Source: Selaginella moellendorffii (Eukaryota; Plantae; Lycopodiophyta). Taken from it: DNA of 64,000 bases. The stretch covers positions 1,736,056 to 1,800,055 of the forward strand of contig NW_003314288.1 of NCBI RefSeq assembly GCF_000143415.4, given 5' to 3'. Position 1 is the stretch's first letter. Each line of letters begins with the position of its first letter. The translations under genes and the position numbers were made by a program. Shown piece after piece: positions 20,357-28,420 of this stretch. The notes under the pieces are model-generated. The model was not told the origin of the DNA. It did not search any database and saw nothing but the letters and a program-made list of their open reading frames with translations.

Positions 20357-21679
20357 TCAGTCCCAATCCTCTTGGGTTTCATCCTCTTGCTCGTCAGATC
20401 CTCCCGGAGGTGACAATGCCAGAAGAACTTCGCCGAGAACTTCCAGGCCTTCGTGAAGATCCTTACCACTTTCCAGCGACAATCCTCCTCCTCCAGACGC
20501 TACTAAGTAGATCGATCCGGCTTTGATCTCGGACACGGTCCCCTTGTCCACGAGAAGCAGCAGCTCCTCGCTTGGATCATCGCTCTTCTTTCTCTGGAGC
20601 CGGAGTTCTCGAGCGTCCGGGAACAAGATGGTGATCGGGGACACCGCTGCTAGAACCGGCTTCCAGCCCGGGAGTGGCACCCAGCCCCGCCACGCCGTGC
20701 TCGACCTGTGAATTCTAAACGCTCCCTCGCCGAGAGCCCCGCCGGAAGGAGCCGCTTTGATCGAGCTCGCGTCCGGGTCCGCCACCGGGAGCATCACCAG
20801 CCCCGCGGTCTCTCCATACTCGAGCCTCACCACGCTCACCATCTTGGCCGGCTTCTCCTCCTTGCCTGCGAGTGCTTGTTTCTCCACGGGATCTTTCTCA
20901 CCCAGCGAGCTCGACAGCAAACTCCTGGCGCTTTTCGAGGTGGCGAACTCGAGAGCTTTCCTCAGCGCGTCCTCTCGCTCGCCATCCTTGAGCTCCTTGC
21001 TCTGGCGGTACCACCAGAAGGCCAGGCAGTCACCCGGATCCGATGAGAAGAACTCCCTCCCAAACTCACGCTTCCTCCGCTCGAAATCCTTGAGCGCCCT
21101 CGCCACGTCCCTGGCGGCCTTGGAGTCGCCCATGGCCCTCTCGATCACGTACTCCGCCGCCACGCGCCGCTGGGGCGCGGACAAGATCCGGAGCTCGTAG
21201 AGAATGGCCGCGCCGCCGACATCGAAATCGAAGAACTCTAGCGATTTCGCGTCCATCCCAGTGGAGATGAGAGTGTCCCTCACCTGGCACGCCACCACAA
21301 TCTGGTTTTGCTCCACGCCCGTGAGCCCCGTCGCCTCGTCCAGTGACGCCGGCGTGTAGCCGGAGCGCATCAGTCCGGGGATGTGCTTGCCATAGTCGTG
21401 CCACTGTCCCCGCCGCTCCCGGACGATCTCTAGCTGCTGCTCGGGTGACACCACCGATTCCAGCACGCCCGGCGGTGGGCGGAAGGGCTGATAGAAGGCG
21501 TCGCGCCCCCCTGGAGTGTTGCTGAGCAGCAATCTATCCCGCAGGCTGCTGCCACACGCGAATCGGGCGCCTCGCCTGATGCTTGGAGCTGCCGAGTGGA
21601 TATTGGCGACGGGGGAGACGGGAATCCGGAAGGAGCAGCAGCCCAGGGCGTGAATCTCCATGCCCGCATTGCCCGCCAT
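20357..21679 (-). CDS. RAF1: Rubisco accumulation factor 1; intronless
   Basis: Transit peptide, YQPFRPPP, RRGQWHDY..IPGL..SGYTP..LDEATGLTGVEQNQIVVA.QVRD.L, LYELRILS, acidic C-terminus ending EDWD. Confidence 0.9.
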   Translation of the reverse strand: MAGNAGMEIHALGCCSFRIPVSPVANIHSAAPSIRRGARFACGSSLRDRLLLSNTPGGRDAFYQPFRPPPGVLESVVSPEQQLEIVRERRGQWHDYGKHIPGLMRSGYTPASLDEATGLTGVEQNQIVVACQVRDTLISTGMDAKSLEFFDFDVGGAAILYELRILSAPQRRVAAEYVIERAMGDSKAARDVARALKDFERRKREFGREFFSSDPGDCLAFWWYRQSKELKDGEREDALRKALEFATSKSARSLLSSSLGEKDPVEKQALAGKEEKPAKMVSVVRLEYGETAGLVMLPVADPDASSIKAAPSGGALGEGAFRIHRSSTAWRGWVPLPGWKPVLAAVSPITILFPDARELRLQRKKSDDPSEELLLLVDKGTVSEIKAGSIYLVASGGGGLSLESGKDLHEGLEVLGEVLLALSPPGGSDEQEDETQEDWD

Positions 21680-21750
21680 GGCGTGACGCCAAAGAACCCT
21701 AAAGCTAAAACTATTTAAAGCTTTCAAGTGTAACCCTTTTTAGGGCAAGG

Positions 21751-22955
21751 ATGTTAGAACCAAAGTTCTCGTGGTGGGAGGATTGCGTCCCAGAGACCGC
21801 CAAGGCCAAGGAGCTCGTCAAGAAAGTTGGCCAGCTCAGCAGGACGTTCCTGTGCGCCGGCAGCGGTACGCTGCCTCTTCCCAAGGGTGGCCTTTCGATC
21901 TGGTTTCTCAAGGTATGTCCTTCTTGCTTTTGGAGTCGATTGTTCCTCTTCCTTCGCAGGCAGATGGCTCTCCGACGTTGCTGGCTTTCGATGGATCGAC
22001 GAGTCCCTCCCCCGCGGCCGTGGAGGGAATCAAAGCCGCAAAGCCTCCGCTTGCCTGCGATCTGGACGTGCATCAACTCGGCAACCTCGCTGCCTCGCTC
22101 GTCCAGGACTACAGCGTCAAAGCCGAGCTCCACAAGCTCTGCCTCCGGGAGACCAAGGACAAGTTTGAGCTTGTCCGCGGTGGCGAAGCCAACTCCTCCA
22201 TGGGAACTCTAGTGCTGGTTCTTCCGCTGCCACACACCGGCGGCGACGTGCTCGTCCACCCGGCATCTGGAAAATCTGGCGAGCTCAAGTTCCCCGTGAC
22301 ATCAAGTGGAGCATCAGAGCTTACCTGGGTGGCGTGCCTCCGGCCGCACAGTGTCGACGTGGGCGAGATCGAGTCCGGGCAGCAGCTCGCGCTCTGGTAC
22401 AACCTCTGCGCGACGGGGAAACGCAAGCGTGATGATCCCAAGAGGCTGCTTGGTGATCCAAAGTCTTCGCCTCTCTACTGGGTCCTCCGGGAGATTTACG
22501 AGGACGACGAGTTTTGCCCCGTCGCTGGCTGCATCCTGGGAATCCCTGGGACCGGAGATAAGCAGTGGGACGATATGATCGTGGAGATGGCGAAGGCGGC
22601 AGGCATGGGTGCGAAGAAGGTGGTGGTGTTTAGCCGGTCTGCTGGTGACACTAGCATTAGTCTTTGCAGCGAGACTGGTGTGGGATTGAAGAGTGCTAAA
22701 GCGGTGGTGTGGTGCCGGGGCGTGGGTTCGTTTCATTGGGAGAGCGATATGGGAGCGATGTATGGCGATCAGTATGATTCTGTCAAGGCTGACGCGGTGA
22801 TGGTGGTGGTGCCTTGCCTGGACAGGAGGCGGGCAAACCCGGGTGATGACGATGGTCCGCTTGTGGACTATCAGATCATCTTGGAGGCATCTGATGATGG
22901 AGAAGACGAAGAGTGCCCTTTTTTCTTTTGGGACGAAGAGAAAGAGGAGGAGTGA
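21751..22955 (+). CDS. Fe(II)/2OG-dioxygenase-like protein of fungal-type pattern, metal ligands apparently absent; copy 1 (intron 21913-21959)
   Basis: Exon 1 (54 codons) splices in frame to the 21771 ORF; motifs VKAELHKL, GTLVLVLP.PHTGGDVLV, WVAC...SGQQLALWYNL. Confidence 0.7.
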
Positions 22956-23343
22956 CGAAGAGGAAGTGAATTGCAACGGAAGAAGTTTAAAGGAGAGGGA
23001 GACAAACCTTTGAAATCTTTGCAGCAAAATATCAAATGAGCTTTTATTTCCACCTTGCAAATCCTCAACAGTACCCAGCTCTATACTGATAATTCTCTGC
23101 GTTTCTTCGTATTAGAACAAAACGGGTAGAGACAACTGAAGAGAACAAGAGCTCGATTTTCTTTCTCGTTCTCGTTCGTTCCTGTAGAGTCGACTTTTAG
23201 TGTCTTTTCATGTTGATCGGTGAAGCTTCTTATCATCGCTGTCAGCAGCACAAACATTTCTCATCGATGCGGCTGTGACACAAGAAAAAAGAGCTGGAGA
23301 GAACTAAAGAAAACGCGAACCTGATAACATGAAGCTCTGTCGA

Positions 23344-23540
23344 ACCGTTGTTTTCTTGTGATCACAGTGATCACGTTGCTTTCCAATGTGTTTTTGGACC
23401 GTTGTTTTCATGTAGTTTGCACAGTCGTTGCCCTTCACTCCTTGGACCCTTGACCTACACTTGATTTGTTTCTAAAGTTGAACTGGTGTTCGTTCTTGTA
23501 GCATTCTCTTTTAAGACCGTTGTTCTTAAAAACCGTTGTT
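23344..23540. promoter_or_regulatory. Four exact ACCGTTGTT (reverse AACAACGGT) MYB/MSA-like elements
   Basis: Copies at 23344, 23398, 23516 and 23532, upstream of ATG 23608. Confidence 0.55.
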
Positions 23541-23607
23541 CCATAGCTCCATGATCCCTAAATCCAAATAAGAGCATAAATAACAACACCTAGGGCCAAA
23601 GTTGGCA

Positions 23608-24974
23608 ATGGAGTTCTCGTGGGCGGAGGATTGTGTCCCAAAAACCGCCAAGGCTAAGCAGCTCGTCAAGAAAGTTGGCGAGCTCAGCAGGACGTTCCTG
23701 TGCTCCTCCAGCGGTACGCTGGCGCTTCCCAAGGATGGCCTCTCAATCACGTTTGTCAAGGTATCTCCTTTCTCCTTGCTTTTGTATTGTAAATCGATCA
23801 TTTGCAGGCCGATGGCTCTCCCGCGTTGCTGACTTTCGATGGGTCAACAAGCCCCTCCCCCGCGGCCGTGGAGGGAATCAAAGCAGCAAAGCCTCCGCTT
23901 ATCTGCGATCTGGACGTGTATCAACTGGGCAACCTCGCCGCCCCACTCGTCCATGGCTACAGCGTCAAAGCTGAGCTCCACAAGCTCAGCCTTAAAAAGG
24001 CCAAAGACAAGTTTGAGCTTGTCCGTGGTGGCGAAGCCAGCTCCTCCACTTGCGTCGGAACTCTAGTGCTGGTTCTTCCGCTGCCACACACCGGCGGCGA
24101 CGTACTCGTCCGCCCGGCCTCTGGAAAATCCGGCGAGCTCAAGTTCCCCGTTAGAACAAGTGGATCATCAGAGCTTACCTGGGTGGCGTGCCTGCGGCCG
24201 CACGGTGTCGACGTCGGCGCGATTGAGTCCGGGCAGCAGCTCACGCTCTGGTACAACCTCCACCGCCTCGAACGCGCTACGGCGAAACGCAAGCGTGATG
24301 ATCCCAAGAAGCTGCTGGGCGATCCAAAGTCTTCGCCCCTCTACTGGGTCCTCCGGGAGATTTATGAGGACGACAAGTTTTGTCCCGTCGCTGGCTGCAT
24401 CCTGGGAATCCCAGGCACCGGGGACGAGAACTGGGACGATATGATCGTGCAGATAGCGAAGGCGGCTGGCATGGGTGCCAAGAAGGTGTTGGTGTTTAGC
24501 CGGGATGCTGGTGATCCCGAAATGTTACTGGGGGAGAAGGATGACATTCCGGACTATAGCTTAGACTGCACTCAACCGGGATTGAGCAGTGCTAAAGCGG
24601 TGGTGTGGTGCCGGGGCTTGAGTTCATTTCGTTGGGAGCACGAGACGGCAGGGAAGTATTACAATGAGTATAATTATGCCAAGGCTGCCGCAGTGATGGT
24701 GGTGGTGCCTTGCCTGGACAAGAGGCGAGCAAACCCGGGTGATGACGATGATCGGCTTCAGCACTATGGGATCATCTTGGATGACTCTGATGTATGGGAG
24801 GAAGAGTGCACCTTTGAGTATGCCTTCCACGGGGACAATGTCAAGGAGGAAGAGGACGAGGACGAGAGCGGGGAGGACGAGGGCGAAGGGAACGAGAGCA
24901 AAGAGGACGAGGATGAGAGCAGGGAGGACGAGGGCGAAGGGGACGAGAGCAAAGAGGACGAGGACGACGAGTGA
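23608..24974 (+). CDS. Fe(II)/2OG-dioxygenase-like protein, copy 2, with expanded acidic tail (intron 23761-23807)
   Basis: Close paralog of copy 1 with the same intron position and an open frame. Confidence 0.72.
24852..24971 (+). repeat. 51-bp tandem repeat, about 2.3 copies, encoding EDEDES(G/R)EDEGEG(N/D)ESK
   Basis: Direct repeat units begin at 24852, 24903 and 24954. Confidence 0.9.
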
Positions 24975-25367
24975 CGAGGGAGCCACTGGAGAAATTTATG
25001 GACTGCAATAGGCAATATTAGTAATAGACTCCCACCTTTTGAATAGAAATGACCACCACCACCAAACTAGAACTTGAATACCCAAACGAGCCTCTCCAAT
25101 CCCCCGTGTTCAAGCATCCATTCAAGGCCATCAGTCTGCTGACGGCTGCTGCCAGATGAATCAGTCTCCCACAGTCTGGCCATGCCGTGCTTAGCAAGCC
25201 GCAAGCATGCCTTACCTCCGAGCAGCATGCTCCTATCAGCAGTGGATAAGAAAAAACCAAGAAAAAAAGAACATCGAAACTTGTCAGCGATCTTTGGTTG
25301 ATCCATGGGATTCACAGCTTGCTGTCATCGTTATAAGTGCATTCATGGACAGTCACTAAAGCTTAAA

Positions 25368-26030
25368 CTGTCCCAAAGACCCAAGGCCAAGGAGCTCGTC
25401 AAGAAAGTTGGCGAGCTCAGCAGGACGTTCCTGTGCGCCTCGACTGGTACGCTGCCCATGGCCTCTCAATCTCGTCCAATCAACTCCTGATACGAGCTGA
25501 TCGTGCTAAAGCCACAAAAGAAATGAGAGAGCAAGAGCGAGATTGAGCGTTACTTTCCTCAAGGTATCTCCTTTAGTCAAAATGCTTTTCCTCGATTGAT
25601 GCTTCCCTCACAGGCCGCTTGCTGATCTTCGAGCCCTTCCGAAGGAATCAAAGCCGCAAAACCCCCGCTGTCCTGCAATCTGGACGTGTATCAACTGGGC
25701 AACCTCGTCGCCCCGCTCGTCCAGGGCTACAGCGTCAAAGCCGAGCTCCACATAAAAAGGCCAAAGATAAGTTTGGCTTGGCAGCAAAATGACGAGTGCC
25801 AAAGCAGTGTGGGGCATTGGTTCGTTTCGGTGGGAGCACGAGACAAGCGGGAAGTATTACGAGTTTAACTACCCAAGGAATGCCTGAGCAAGAGGCGGGC
25901 AGACCCGGGTGATGAAGCTTGAGAATTATGAGATCATCTTGGAAGCGCACCTTTGAGTATGCCTTTCAGGGGGACGAAGTGAGCAGTCGTTTGATTCATA
26001 GACTCCCACCTGAAACCACCACCACGGTGA
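25368..26030 (+). pseudogene. Third, deletion-riddled copy of the 2OG-dioxygenase-like gene
   Basis: ccaaggccaaggagctcgtcaagaaagttggcgagctcagcaggacgttcctgtgc, tggacgtgtatcaactgggcaacctcg and cacctttgagtatgcctt all match copies 1/2; frame is broken. Confidence 0.88.
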
Positions 26031-26074: not shown

Positions 26075-28420
26075 TTAACGAGTACCTGTGTAAATGCTCG
26101 AAAGCGTCACGTAAGTTGGAGGCTCCTCCGGGACGAGGCCGATACATGTCCGTGCCGCCCGTGTTGCTCGCTCCACATCGCCGTGGACCCTGCAAGCATC
26201 CAGCAGCGACGTCAAAACCATGGGATTCGACGGCTGCTTCAAGTGCCCCGCAAACTTCTCGGCCTCCTCCAAGCGTCCGGTGCGTCCTACCAGATCAATC
26301 AGGCTGCCATAGTGCTCGCTCGTCGGCAGCAGGCCGTGCTCTCTGGTCATGGAAGTGAAGCACTCGAGCGCTTCCTCCAGCAGGCCGGCGTGCCGGCAGG
26401 CCGAGAGGACAATCACGTAAGTGATTGCGTCCGGCTTTACGTCCTCCTGTTGCATCCTCCGAAACGCGAGGATCGTTCCCCTGGCCTTGCCGTGCTGAGC
26501 ATAAGCCGCAAGCATCGAGTTCCATGCCGCTGTGTCTCTCTCGGCCATCAGCTCAAAAGCAGCCTGTGCTTCCATGAGGCTGCCACTCTTCCCATACATG
26601 CTCACGAGCGCCGTTCCCAGAGAGAGCTCTATCGCCAGGCCCCTCTCTCTCACGCAGCCATGGACAGCCTTGCCATCTTTCAGCGAAGGCAAGCTTGCGC
26701 ATGCGTTAAGAACCGTCGCAAACGTGAGCCTGTCAGGAACCACGGCTTCCAGGAGCATCCGGTGGTATACGTGCAGTGCTTCCCTGTCTTTCCCTTGCTG
26801 GAAGCAGGCCGTGATCATCGACGTCCACGATATCAAGTTTCGCAGCTCCATTTTCTCGAACAGGAGACGGGTGTCGCCGAGGCTAGCGCACTTCCCATAC
26901 ATGTCGAGAAGAGAGTTGGCCACGCAGACGTCGTCCTCCAGCCCAGCCTCGGCAGCGTGAGCGTGGACTACCTTCCCAGCTTCGAGAGCTTCTTCGCTGG
27001 CGAACGAGTTCAGCAGGGACATGAAAGTTATCCCGTCCGGCTTGACACCTTCCAGTTGAATCCGCTGGTAGAGCCGGAAAGCTTGCGAGGAGCACTTGGC
27101 GTCGGCATAAACTCCAAACATGGTGTTCCAGGAGACGAGATTTCGCGAGCTCATGTCGTAGAAAACACGCTCCGAGTCTTCCAGAGCCCCGCATTTGCCA
27201 TACATGTTGATCAGCGCAGTCCGGACCACGAGATCCGGGTCGCAGCGAACGTACTCGTGAATCATCCGGCCCGTCCGAAGAGCTGCTGGACCGGAGCACG
27301 CATTGAGCAAGCTCACAAACGTAGCTTTCGTCGGCCTTTTCCCTTCCAGCAGCATCTTGTAGAAGAGCTTGAGCGTGTCTCCATAGCTACCGAGCTCCGC
27401 GGACGCTGCGATGATCGCGTTGTAAGACACCACGTCCTTGTCCAGGATCATCCGGAAAGCCTTCCTCGCCTCGGCCAGGCAGCCACACTTGCTGTACAAG
27501 TTGACGAGAGCTGTCCCGACTAGAACGTTGGAGATCAATCCGCCAGCGGCAGCCTTCTCGTGGATGATCCTCCCTTGTTCTAGATCACCCGAGTCGGCAC
27601 AGGCATTGAGCACCGCCACGAAAGTCACCTCGTTCGGAGCCACCAGCTTCAGCTCCATCTTCTGGAAGTTCTCCAGAGCTTGATCGTAGAACCCATGGTT
27701 GGCGTAGGCAGTGATCAATGCTGTCCAGCTTATCACCGTCTTCTCGCGGACTCCATCGAAGATCTCTCGCGCGGCATCCACGTCTCCGCATTTGCCAAAC
27801 ATGTTGACGAGCGCGGTCCCGACGGTGGAGTCCTTGCAGTGCTCGGTCTCTCCAACGTTTCTGGAAAGGAGATAGGCCTCTCGAGCAAAAGGCCCGCGAG
27901 CGCAAACATCGATGGCCGTGAAGAAGGTGACCCTGTTTGGAGCAATCCCCGCGAGCAGCATCCTCTGGTAGATCTCAAACGCCTTCCAGAGCTCACCGTT
28001 CTGCGAGAAGGCCGTGATCATCGACGTCCACGACACCACGGTCGTGGATCGCATCGCCTGGAACACAGCATAGGCGCGCGCGGGGCTGCCGCATTTGCCA
28101 TACATTTTGATGAGATTGTTGTGGACGAAGACGTTGTTGTCGTCGATCCCGGCCCTGGCGAGGTTCTCGTGGACTTGGATCCCCAGAGCCAGGGATCTCT
28201 CGCAGGAACACACCTGGAGGAGGTGGAAGTAGAGCTCTGGATCCGGCCGCGCCTGCGCATTGATGCTCCCCAGAGCGTCCCTCACCTGGCCGAGATTTTG
28301 GATCGTGCTCTGGTACCCCAGGCATTCCTTCAAGATCGCCTTCTTCTTGCCCTCCTCGGTGCCGATAGCTGACGATCGCACAAATTGGATACATTTCTTG
28401 CCGCTGCTCCTGCGGATCAT
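26075..28420 (-). CDS. PLS-class PPR protein (P-L-S triplets), E-type; intronless
   Basis: 781-aa ORF with repeated ALVNMYGKCG, VSWT.MI and PD..TF..VL.AC motifs; HYGSLIDLVGRTG. Confidence 0.93.
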   Translation of the reverse strand: MIRRSSGKKCIQFVRSSAIGTEEGKKKAILKECLGYQSTIQNLGQVRDALGSINAQARPDPELYFHLLQVCSCERSLALGIQVHENLARAGIDDNNVFVHNNLIKMYGKCGSPARAYAVFQAMRSTTVVSWTSMITAFSQNGELWKAFEIYQRMLLAGIAPNRVTFFTAIDVCARGPFAREAYLLSRNVGETEHCKDSTVGTALVNMFGKCGDVDAAREIFDGVREKTVISWTALITAYANHGFYDQALENFQKMELKLVAPNEVTFVAVLNACADSGDLEQGRIIHEKAAAGGLISNVLVGTALVNLYSKCGCLAEARKAFRMILDKDVVSYNAIIAASAELGSYGDTLKLFYKMLLEGKRPTKATFVSLLNACSGPAALRTGRMIHEYVRCDPDLVVRTALINMYGKCGALEDSERVFYDMSSRNLVSWNTMFGVYADAKCSSQAFRLYQRIQLEGVKPDGITFMSLLNSFASEEALEAGKVVHAHAAEAGLEDDVCVANSLLDMYGKCASLGDTRLLFEKMELRNLISWTSMITACFQQGKDREALHVYHRMLLEAVVPDRLTFATVLNACASLPSLKDGKAVHGCVRERGLAIELSLGTALVSMYGKSGSLMEAQAAFELMAERDTAAWNSMLAAYAQHGKARGTILAFRRMQQEDVKPDAITYVIVLSACRHAGLLEEALECFTSMTREHGLLPTSEHYGSLIDLVGRTGRLEEAEKFAGHLKQPSNPMVLTSLLDACRVHGDVERATRAARTCIGLVPEEPPTYVTLSSIYTGTR

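What the first reader, a model, noticed from the sequence alone, without database searches (positions are those of the whole stretch)
21751..26030. Tandem family of fungal-type Fe(II)/2OG-dioxygenase-like proteins that appear to lack every catalytic ligand
Seen: two intact spliced paralogs plus one pseudogene. From memory, they follow the pattern of an uncharacterised, mainly fungal/microbial 2OG-Fe(II) family (F.CGG, AELYKLNVY...FKAHVD, GSLVV.LP..HEGG.L.V, WAAFYSDCEHEV..V.SG.R.TLTYNL, F.P.GG.LG). Aligned to that pattern, the HxD position reads V-R-G (KFELVRGG), the distal His reads Val (PHSVDV/PHGVDV), and the 2OG-binding Arg reads Gln (SGQQL), in both copies. Inference: a possibly horizontally acquired double-stranded beta-helix scaffold retained as a pseudoenzyme or binding protein with an acidic tail. 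This is the best candidate for an undescribed system in the window.
Basis: partly seen in the sequence, partly recalled or inferred. Interest (0 to 1): 0.8.

Follow-up and report, generated by a model that had tools for sequence, protein, structure and literature searches.

The report
Dead fungal-type oxygenase genes in spikemoss
The spikemoss Selaginella moellendorffii carries two neighbouring intact genes and one wreck of a protein family otherwise found almost only in fungi; they keep the fold of an iron/2-oxoglutarate oxygenase but have lost every residue that holds the iron and the co-substrate, so they probably act as non-enzymatic binding proteins of unknown role.

Summary
The window is Selaginella moellendorffii. 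At 21751-26030 lie two intact two-exon paralogs (382 and 439 aa, 75% identical; copy 2 is SELMODRAFT_415543) and a gutted third copy. A spliced contig confirms the copy-2 intron.

Pfam, NCBIfam and PDB sequence searches find nothing. An exhaustive phmmer search finds 30 distant relatives (E 7e-12 to 1e-3). 23 of 31 carry PF13640. Every named one is fungal (18), apart from two bacterial MAGs and one more Selaginella paralog.

In the alignment and in an HMM built without Selaginella, 26 of 30 relatives keep Tyr/His/Asp/His/Arg. Both window copies read His/Val/Gly/Val/Gln. The AlphaFold model matches prolyl-4-hydroxylase-like oxygenases only (Z 8.3).

The distant paralog also lacks HxD and has Arg->Gln. 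It shares the same phase-0 intron, a KRKR linker and an acidic tail. The catalytic loss is therefore probably old.

dN/dS is 0.31 over the first 235 exon-2 codons and about 1.1 over the last 95.

Transfer from a fungus is plausible but unresolved: the tree places the copies on a long unresolved branch. Dead double-stranded beta-helix domains are a known kind, so this is a new variant of modest interest. The scan also holds unchecked notes on other microbial-type 2OG oxygenases in this genome.

The parts
21751..21903 (+). Copy 1, exon 1 (51 codons; carries the degenerate N-terminal 'F.C.GSG' motif and ends in ...IWFLK)
   Evidence: ORF and GT donor read. Same phase-0 intron position as copy 2 and as the distant paralog P0018. 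No RNA evidence for this intron.
21904..21959 (+). Copy 1 intron (56 nt, GT..AG)
   Evidence: Sequence. Inferred by homology with copy 2.
21960..22955 (+). Copy 1, exon 2 (331 codons + stop): DSBH core, KRKR linker, C-terminal alpha/beta domain, short acidic end
   Evidence: Contigs of runs X1 and X3 cover 22007-23036. 72.3 bits against the HMM of non-Selaginella relatives.
22173..22181 (+). Copy 1 codons V-R-G at the H-x-D position
22347..22355 (+). Copy 1 codons H-S-V: Val at the distal-His position, with a His two residues before it
22383..22385 (+). Copy 1 Gln codon at the position of the 2OG-binding Arg
23608..23760 (+). Copy 2, exon 1 (51 codons)
   Evidence: Equals the first 51 residues of P0002.
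23761..23807 (+). Copy 2 intron (47 nt, GT..AG)
   Evidence: A contig of run X1 skips these 47 nt (table 5).
23808..24974 (+). Copy 2, exon 2 (388 codons + stop)
   Evidence: phmmer hits to PF13640 proteins. 81.4 bits against the HMM of relatives. Model m678e400d8735.
24021..24029 (+). Copy 2 codons V123-R124-G125 at the H-x-D position
24201..24209 (+). Copy 2 codons H183-G184-V185: Val at the distal-His position
24237..24239 (+). Copy 2 Gln195 at the position of the 2OG-binding Arg
24285..24296 (+). K-R-K-R cluster just after the last DSBH strand (nuclear-localisation-like). Also present in copy 1 and, at the equivalent place, in P0018; absent from the fungal relatives shown.
   Evidence: Alignments. 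Localisation itself is inferred, not tested.
24850..24967 (+). 51-bp tandem repeat (2.3 copies, 94% matches) that encodes most of copy 2's acidic tail
25369..25975 (+). Copy 3, pseudogene: five collinear fragments (76-91% identical to copy 2), no start codon, DSBH core and half of the C-terminal domain deleted, foreign insert between the exon-1 remnant and the intron remnant

Best explanation
These are lineage-specific, catalytically dead descendants of a prolyl-4-hydroxylase-like Fe(II)/2-oxoglutarate oxygenase family that is otherwise almost confined to fungi. Shown: they keep the family's whole architecture (N-terminal region, double-stranded beta-helix core, family-specific C-terminal alpha/beta domain). 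They have replaced both iron-binding histidines, the aspartate, the arginine that holds the 2-oxoglutarate carboxylate and a conserved tyrosine of the first core strand. Inferred: they cannot carry out canonical Fe/2OG oxidation. The core is kept under purifying selection as a binding scaffold, while the C-terminal third evolves freely. A K-R-K-R cluster and an acidic tail suggest a nuclear protein that binds basic partners. A very divergent paralog at another locus shares the ligand loss, the intron position, the KRKR linker and the acidic tail. The loss therefore probably happened once, early in the Selaginella lineage, after the gene arrived there, most economically from a fungus. The tandem pair and the wreck are later local duplications (dS 0.25).
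For: Homology: phmmer against 1.84 billion representatives gives 30 relatives, best E 6.7e-12, and 23 of 31 carry PF13640. An HMM built without Selaginella scores copy 2 at 81.4 bits, copy 1 at 72.3 and P0018 at 179.7 over its full length. Language-model features point to the same fungal PF13640 clusters (0.97).

Fold: model pLDDT 69.9, with core blocks at 84-92. The Foldseek top rows are 2OG oxygenases (6n1f, PHD2). VIA gives Z 8.3 over 137-148 residues at rmsd 4.0 to P. putida P4H, PiuC and 6n1f, covering model residues 27-210. An Atlas basidiomycete cluster aligns over residues 9-391.

Ligand loss: 26 of 30 relatives read Y-H-D-H-R and the window copies read H-V-G-V-Q, with top posterior probability in the HMM alignment.

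Age of the loss: P0018/P0037 lack HxD, have Arg->Gln and Tyr->His, and carry KRKR and an acidic tail. The phase-0 intron sits after the same Lys. Fungal introns lie 6 columns away or are absent there. Selaginella monophyly is not rejected (p-AU 0.365).

Selection: dN/dS is 0.31 over exon-2 codons 1-235 (Fisher p 4e-6) and 0.38 in the core (p 0.015).

Expression: a spliced copy-2 contig and exon-only coverage of both copies in run X1.

Integration in plant DNA: the array is flanked by Raf1 and PPR genes.
Against: No binding partner, localisation or metal-binding measurement exists, so the non-catalytic role is inference. Overall dN/dS is only 0.54 and the last ~95 codons run at 1.1. Differences between the X1 contigs and the window are 12 non-synonymous to 4 synonymous, the neutral ratio, although the core has 0:2. 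Two raw RNA-seq runs, with 12% of the reads sampled, gave no read on either intact copy while the neighbouring Raf1 gene had depth 10-36. One copy of the array has already decayed. The model coordinates could not be inspected, so a rebuilt metal site (for instance His183, two residues before the lost distal His) is not excluded. AspH variants with a single protein ligand stay active (PMC10947486). The tree does not resolve where the Selaginella proteins attach: the window pair sits on a branch of length 3.4. By raw score copy 2 is closer to a Pleurotus protein than to P0018.
Confidence: 0.6

Rival explanations
1. The genes are functionless relics on their way to becoming pseudogenes. After the catalytic residues were lost, nothing maintains them, and open frames survive only by chance and youth.
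For: One of the three copies is already a wreck. dN/dS in the last third is 1.1 and overall 0.54. Polymorphisms are 12 non-synonymous to 4 synonymous. There were no reads in two raw RNA-seq runs. Copy 2's tail is a recent minisatellite expansion.
Against: Both frames are intact across dS 0.25. The first 235 exon-2 codons show dN/dS 0.31, p 4e-6. A paralog only ~26% identical, with the same ligand loss, still has an intact 525-aa frame in two nearly identical versions (99%; allelic or recently duplicated loci). A correctly spliced transcript exists.
Confidence: 0.2
2. They are still enzymes. Either a non-canonical metal site is built from other side chains (for instance His183 of P-H-G-V-D-V, His109 of A-E-L-H-K-L, His144 of P-H-T-G-G), or a metal-free activity uses the same barrel.
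For: His residues lie close in sequence to the lost ligands. AspH variants work with a single protein ligand (PMC10947486). The core is under purifying selection.
Against: All three ligands, the 2OG-binding Arg and the conserved Tyr are replaced together, by Val, Gly, Val, Gln and His. The P-H-x-G-G His is conserved across active relatives in addition to the triad (alignment), so it is probably not a spare ligand. The three Selaginella proteins do not share one alternative set: P0018 keeps the distal His and the window copies do not.
Confidence: 0.07
3. On origin: this is not a transfer from fungi but an old eukaryotic or early plant gene, lost in the other sampled plants and fast-evolving in Selaginella. 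A bacterial donor is another possibility.
For: The tree gives no supported fungal sister group. The family also occurs in bacteria (two MAGs). The genes have Selaginella-type short introns and host-like GC, so any transfer is old. Only one exhaustive search could be run, with a very divergent query, so plant relatives may have been missed. Two of the word searches were nearly empty for technical reasons.
Against: Among 21 named relatives there are 18 fungi spanning Ascomycota, Basidiomycota and a chytrid, and no plant other than Selaginella. Both Atlas look-ups return only fungal-dominated clusters. The full three-part architecture, including the C-terminal domain, is shared with the fungal proteins.
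Confidence: 0.3

Closest known systems
Uncharacterised fungal 'Fe2OG dioxygenase domain-containing' proteins carrying Pfam PF13640 (2OG-FeII_Oxy_3), e.g. Pleurotus djamor KAJ8522123.1, Neolentinus lepideus KZT24052.1, Pyrenochaeta OAL43424.1
   Same: Significant sequence homology (E down to 6.7e-12; 72-81 bits to their HMM). Same order of parts: N-terminal region, DSBH core with the L-V-V-.-L-P-.-P-H-.-G-G and T-L-.-Y-N-L strands, and a C-terminal alpha/beta domain with the W ... Y-.-N-E ... V-P ... R pattern.
   Different: The fungal proteins keep Tyr, HxD, distal His and Arg (26 of 30). The window proteins have none of them, score nothing against PF13640 itself, lack the H-.-Y ... L-K-G segment of the C-terminal domain, and have gained a KRKR linker and an acidic tail. 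The function of the fungal family is itself unknown.
Prolyl-4-hydroxylase-like 2OG oxygenases with solved structures: Pseudomonas putida P4H (4j25), Burkholderia 6n1f, PiuC (9qn4), human PHD2/EGLN1
   Same: Best structural neighbours of the model over residues 27-210: Z 7.5-8.3, 137-156 residues aligned, rmsd about 4 A. All top rows are of this kind.
   Different: Sequence identity is 6-15%. No sequence-level match to any PDB chain, even with the family profile. No metal or 2OG ligands. Z about 8 is in the range the tool calls middling, so the fold call rests on the sequence homology as well.
Non-catalytic DSBH domains: the C-terminal domain of OGFOD1 / Tpa1p / Ofd1 (PMC4396695)
   Same: A double-stranded beta-helix that has lost its metal site and is thought to serve in partner or substrate binding. 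OGFOD1 and Tpa1p also carry disordered acidic regions.
   Different: In those proteins the dead domain sits next to an active one in the same chain. Here the only DSBH in the protein is dead, and every Selaginella member of this subfamily found (the window pair and P0018/P0037) has the degenerate site. There is no specific sequence relationship.
Selaginella moellendorffii LOC112344705 / LOC112351313 (P0018 / P0037, 525 / 528 aa), at another locus
   Same: Same family. HxD lost, Arg->Gln, Tyr->His, KRKR after the last core strand, acidic tail, and a phase-0 intron after the same Lys.
   Different: Only about 26% identical. It keeps the distal His and the full C-terminal domain motifs, and has a second intron. 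The tree neither joins it to nor separates it from the window pair.

Membership tests
Fe(II)/2-oxoglutarate-dependent oxygenases (as an enzyme class) | [quoted passage not shown] | tested here: met
   AlphaFold model with core pLDDT 84-92. Foldseek and VIA top matches are all 2OG oxygenases, Z up to 8.3 over model residues 27-210.
Fe(II)/2-oxoglutarate-dependent oxygenases (as an enzyme class) | H-x-D/E ... H facial triad that binds Fe(II) | tested here: not met
   Val, Gly and Val in both copies at columns where 27, 27 and 29 of 31 relatives have His, Asp and His. Same result in the HMM alignment, with top posterior probability.
Fe(II)/2-oxoglutarate-dependent oxygenases (as an enzyme class) | Basic residue (Arg/Lys) on the last core strand that binds the 2OG C5 carboxylate | tested here: not met
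   Gln in both copies where 29 of 31 relatives have Arg.
Fe(II)/2-oxoglutarate-dependent oxygenases (as an enzyme class) | Binding of Fe(II) and 2OG, and 2OG turnover | not testable with these tools
   Needs recombinant protein.
Pfam PF13640 (2OG-FeII_Oxy_3) | Score at or above the Pfam gathering threshold | tested here: not met
   No PF13640 row for either exon-2 product even at E up to 10, nor for P0002.
Pfam PF13640 (2OG-FeII_Oxy_3) | Demonstrable homology to proteins that carry the domain | tested here: met
   phmmer E 6.7e-12 to 1e-3 against 30 proteins, 23 of 31 scanned relatives carrying PF13640. 72-81 bits to an HMM of those relatives.
Fungal-type three-part family (N-terminal F-.-C-G-G region, P4H-like core, C-terminal alpha/beta domain) | Core strand motifs A-E-L-.-K-L, G-.-L-V-.-.-L-P-.-P-H-.-G-G, W-.-A, S-G-.-.-.-T-L-.-Y-N-L | tested here: met
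   Alignments.
Fungal-type three-part family (N-terminal F-.-C-G-G region, P4H-like core, C-terminal alpha/beta domain) | C-terminal domain with the G-G-.-L-G, L-K-G-.-D ... L-G-L and W ... Y-G-N-E ... I-P-P ... R patterns | tested here: inconclusive
   MAFFT aligns the window copies along it, but with the H-.-Y ... L-K-G segment missing. The Atlas fungal cluster aligns to residues 9-391. The HMM alignment of the window copies stops at profile column 267. P0018 matches the full length.
Fungal-type three-part family (N-terminal F-.-C-G-G region, P4H-like core, C-terminal alpha/beta domain) | N-terminal F-.-C-G-G motif | tested here: inconclusive
   The window copies read F-L-C-A-G-S-G and F-L-C-S-S-S-G. 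The HMM score of that stretch is about 0 bits. P0018 has F-C-C-G-G.
Non-catalytic DSBH domains of the OGFOD1/Tpa1p type | Dead DSBH paired with an active DSBH in the same chain | tested here: not met
   There is only one DSBH per protein. The C-terminal domain is a small alpha/beta fold with no convincing match. The resemblance is functional analogy only.

The most novel reading that the evidence does not exclude
A fungal prolyl-hydroxylase-like oxygenase gene entered the Selaginella lineage long ago, lost its whole catalytic apparatus once, and has since been kept and duplicated (at least two deep lineages, one of them this tandem array). It serves as a nuclear, acidic-tailed, non-enzymatic binding protein, that is, a plant pseudoenzyme family born from a foreign enzyme. 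It might still recognise the ligand or protein that the fungal enzymes act on, and so could play a part in plant-fungus contact.
Probability: 0.3. Interest if true: 0.55.

Novelty: new variant of a known kind. Interest (0 to 1): 0.4.

Why it matters
If the reading holds, this is a clean natural example of an enzyme scaffold reused after complete loss of its active site. It sits in a plant that seems to have obtained it from outside the plant kingdom, and three proteins of different age date the loss. It also draws attention to a large fungal P4H-like family (Ascomycota, Basidiomycota, a chytrid) with a conserved C-terminal domain of no recognisable fold and no known function. Working out what the dead plant copies bind could give the first handle on the substrate of the live fungal enzymes. 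In itself the locus is not a new kind of system. Dead DSBH domains and fungus-to-early-land-plant transfers are both established themes.

Tried and rejected
1. Pfam, NCBIfam and PDB sequence searches of the exon products, and of the family profile against the PDB, gave nothing.

2. Word-indexed protein search. The first call found only the window's own proteins. The second (P0018) found two unnamed relatives. The third (alignment A2) returned three rows and was in effect wasted, probably through unspecific words. These blanks say nothing about the family's distribution.

3. Phylogeny (35 rows, 393 columns, LG+C20). The window pair sits on a branch of length 3.4 joined to an unresolved backbone, with no supported sister. 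The AU test neither shows nor rejects Selaginella monophyly (p 0.365).

4. The C-terminal domain folded alone (pLDDT 71.6). The best Foldseek E is 0.41 and the best VIA-wide Z is 5.3 (R3H-like small alpha/beta), below any level I would call a match.

5. Contamination by fungal DNA is rejected. The genes sit between Raf1 and PPR genes, have Selaginella-type 47-56-nt introns, and a paralog lies on another scaffold among plant genes.

6. Literature. There is no paper on SELMODRAFT_415543, and none linking Selaginella, fungal transfer and 2OG oxygenases.

7. RNA-seq depth over the pseudogene in runs X14/X15 is mostly cross-mapping. The reads fit only 30-45 nt, and their loose ends are not in the window.

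8. Not done. Copy 2 was handled through the public protein P0002. The dN/dS counts pooled codon tallies of the two exons without writing out a joined product. The model coordinates are not exposed, so no pocket inspection was possible.


Full report
WHAT IS THERE

The window is nuclear DNA of the spikemoss Selaginella moellendorffii. The protein of copy 2 is the public entry SELMODRAFT_415543. The neighbours are a Rubisco accumulation factor 1 gene (20357-21727, minus strand) and a PPR gene (26075-28420, minus strand).

Between them lie three head-to-tail copies on the plus strand.
- Copy 1: exon 1 21751-21903, GT..AG intron 21904-21959, exon 2 21960-22955 (382 codons).
- Copy 2: exon 1 23608-23760, intron 23761-23807, exon 2 23808-24974 (439 codons).
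- Copy 3: the remains at 25369-25975.

The two exon-2 products are 75% identical. P0002 equals my spliced model of copy 2 residue for residue.

Copy 3 is five collinear fragments, 76-91% identical to copy 2. It has no start codon, carries a foreign insert, and has lost about 590 bp that include the second half of the core.

Most of copy 2's acidic tail is a 51-bp tandem repeat (2.3 copies, 94% matches).

WHAT FAMILY

Pfam (to E 10), NCBIfam and PDB sequence searches give nothing. The word-indexed protein search finds only the window's own products.

The exhaustive phmmer search of 1.84 billion representatives with residues 1-385 of P0002 finds 30 further proteins at E 6.7e-12 to 1e-3. All match query residues about 100-250. 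Scanned one by one, 23 of the 31 relatives carry PF13640 (2OG-FeII_Oxy_3), best E 1.7e-21.

An HMM built from the relatives without any Selaginella sequence scores copy 2 at 81.4 bits, copy 1 at 72.3 bits and the other Selaginella paralog at 179.7 bits over the full length. The protein-language-model look-up points to the same fungal PF13640 clusters (0.97).

FOLD

With the 33-row alignment, AlphaFold gives mean pLDDT 69.9 and pTM 0.62, with 84-92 in the core blocks.
- The Foldseek top rows are 2OG oxygenases (Burkholderia 6n1f, PHD2, Trichoplax and Pseudomonas prolyl hydroxylases).
- VIA-align gives Z 8.3 to 7.3 over 137-157 residues at rmsd about 4 A, covering model residues 27-210. All rows are oxygenases of the prolyl-hydroxylase-like group.
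- Z about 8 is middling by the tool's own note. Together with the sequence homology, the DSBH assignment is safe.
- An Atlas basidiomycete cluster aligns over residues 9-391, so the whole architecture is shared.

The C-terminal 180 residues, folded alone (pLDDT 71.6), form a small beta-alpha-beta-alpha-beta domain with no convincing solved counterpart. The best Foldseek E is 0.41 and the best Z is 5.3. It aligns along the C-terminal part of the fungal proteins.

THE CATALYTIC POSITIONS

In the MAFFT alignment, 26 of 30 relatives with those columns filled read Tyr / His / Asp / His / Arg. These are the Tyr of A-E-L-Y-K-L, the H-x-D, the distal His and the Arg of S-G-H-R. Both window copies read His / Val / Gly / Val / Gln.

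The HMM alignment gives the same assignment with the highest posterior class in every one of these columns.

Three relatives are also degenerate: a Mollisia protein and two unnamed ones. Ligand loss thus recurs in the family.

A His sits two residues before the lost distal His, and other His residues are nearby. Whether they could rebuild a site cannot be judged without coordinates, which the tools do not expose. AspH variants with one protein ligand remain active (PMC10947486), so 'dead' is a strong inference, not a measurement.

A THIRD, OLD SELAGINELLA MEMBER

One phmmer hit, P0018, is S. moellendorffii LOC112344705. A 99%-identical second version is LOC112351313, on another scaffold among plant genes.

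It is only about 26% identical to the window proteins, yet it shares the following with them:
- loss of H-x-D;
- Arg->Gln;
- Tyr->His in the first core strand;
- a K-R-K-R cluster directly after the last core strand;
- an A-K-A-A-G helix motif;
- a long acidic tail.

Its gene has a phase-0 intron after '...G-I-W-Y-T-K'. This is the same residue position as '...S-I-W-F-L-K' and '...S-I-T-F-V-K' in the window copies. Two basidiomycete genes have an intron six profile columns further on. An ascomycete gene and an unnamed intronless relative have none there.

These shared derived characters argue that the Selaginella proteins descend from one ancestor that was already dead.

The tree does not show this. 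Both Selaginella groups are long branches on an unresolved backbone. The AU test leaves monophyly open (p 0.365).

IS IT ALIVE AS A GENE?

Run X1 (contigs; its RNA status is a guess) covers the exons of both intact copies and not the spacers. One of its contigs skips exactly the 47-nt intron of copy 2.

Two raw RNA-seq runs, with 12% of the reads sampled, show no read on either intact copy, while the neighbouring Raf1 gene has depth 10-36. Expression is therefore low or conditional.

Depth over the pseudogene in those runs is mostly cross-mapping of 30-45-nt pieces. The flanks of those reads are not in the window.

Selection between the two copies:

| Region | dS | dN/dS | Fisher p |
|---|---|---|---|
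| Whole gene | 0.25 | 0.54 | - |
| Exon-2 codons 1-235 | - | 0.31 | 4e-6 |
| Core only | - | 0.38 | 0.015 |
| Last ~95 codons | - | 1.1 | - |

Differences between the X1 contigs and the window are 12 non-synonymous to 4 synonymous. None of the non-synonymous ones is in the core.

The core is constrained and the C-terminal third is not.

ORIGIN

Of the 21 relatives that carry a source name, 18 are fungi. These are Ascomycota, Basidiomycota and Chytridium lagenaria. Two are bacterial MAGs and one is the Selaginella paralog. No other plant appeared.

GC content and intron size are those of the host, so any transfer is old.

Transfer from a fungus is the most economical reading, at about even odds or somewhat better. 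It rests on absence in one exhaustive search with a highly divergent query, and on a tree without a supported sister group. The other two word searches were nearly empty for technical reasons.

The scan's own notes list other 'microbial-type' 2OG dioxygenases flagged as transfer candidates elsewhere in this genome. I did not check them.

HOW IT MOST LIKELY WORKS

Shown:
- the fold;
- the family;
- loss of all canonical ligands;
- an intact and spliced gene;
- a constrained core.

Inferred:
- The proteins no longer oxidise anything.
- They are kept for what the barrel and its N-terminal flank still bind.
- The KRKR cluster and acidic tail suggest a nuclear protein that contacts basic partners.

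The nearest analogy is the metal-free C-terminal DSBH domain of OGFOD1/Tpa1p/Ofd1, which is thought to serve partner binding (PMC4396695). There, however, the dead domain accompanies a live one in the same chain.

The main rival is slow decay without function (about 0.2). A non-canonical enzyme is unlikely (about 0.07).

VERDICT

This is a new, lineage-specific dead variant of a known kind (a DSBH pseudoenzyme) within an uncharacterised, mostly fungal family. Interest is moderate: 0.4, not 0.8.

Copy 2 was handled through the public protein P0002, and the exons were otherwise used by reference.

Noticed in passing
window 25278-25322 and 25476-25507: Two short stretches inside the pseudogene region attract many RNA-seq reads (up to 88 in X15). 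These reads fit only those 30-45 nt and continue on both sides into sequence that is not in the window. The region therefore holds small pieces identical to part of a well-expressed transcript from elsewhere, possibly captured gene fragments.
   Followed up: partly
L001:8001-9702 (S. moellendorffii scaffold GL377565.1, 865708-867409): A deeply diverged paralog (LOC112344705, 525 aa, two introns) of the window genes. It lies between a methyltransferase gene and a cyclic-nucleotide-gated channel gene, and also lacks HxD and the 2OG-binding Arg but keeps the distal His.
   Followed up: partly
L003:501-2692 (Pleurotus djamor JAPEVF010000016.1): The annotated 518-aa Pleurotus protein P0003 contains the A-E-L-Y-K-L-N-.-Y-G / P-G-S-F-F-K-A-H-K-D junction twice, separated by a 463-nt 'intron'. 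It looks like a gene model that fuses two tandem family members. The family is thus tandemly duplicated in that fungus too.
   Followed up: no
P0038 / P0050 (unnamed; ENA contigs up to 4.07 Mb, Logan SRR33343645): The closest relative of the paralog P0018 (E 1e-28) is an intronless 454-aa protein with intact ligands. It comes from an unnamed assembly whose neighbourhood is called as tiny ORFs without Pfam hits, as for eukaryotic DNA. In the tree it groups with a Chytridium protein (97/84).
   Followed up: partly
family-wide, e.g. P0005:278-486, P0002:205-388: The C-terminal ~200 residues of this fungal family (patterns G-G-.-L-G, L-K-G-.-D ... L-G-L, W ... Y-G-N-E ... I-P-P ... R) form a predicted small alpha/beta domain with no Pfam model and no convincing structural match.
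   Followed up: partly
window 20357-21727 (-) and 26075-28420 (-): The flanking genes are an intronless Rubisco accumulation factor 1 (Raf1_HTH, Raf1_N, RuBisCo_chap_C) and a 781-aa PPR protein. The Raf1 gene is well expressed in all four runs laid.
   Followed up: partly
window 22503-22931 and 23892-24649: Contigs of run X1 differ from the window at 16 coding sites in the two intact copies (about 1%), presumably the other haplotype or another accession. 12 of the 16 change the amino acid.
   Followed up: yes
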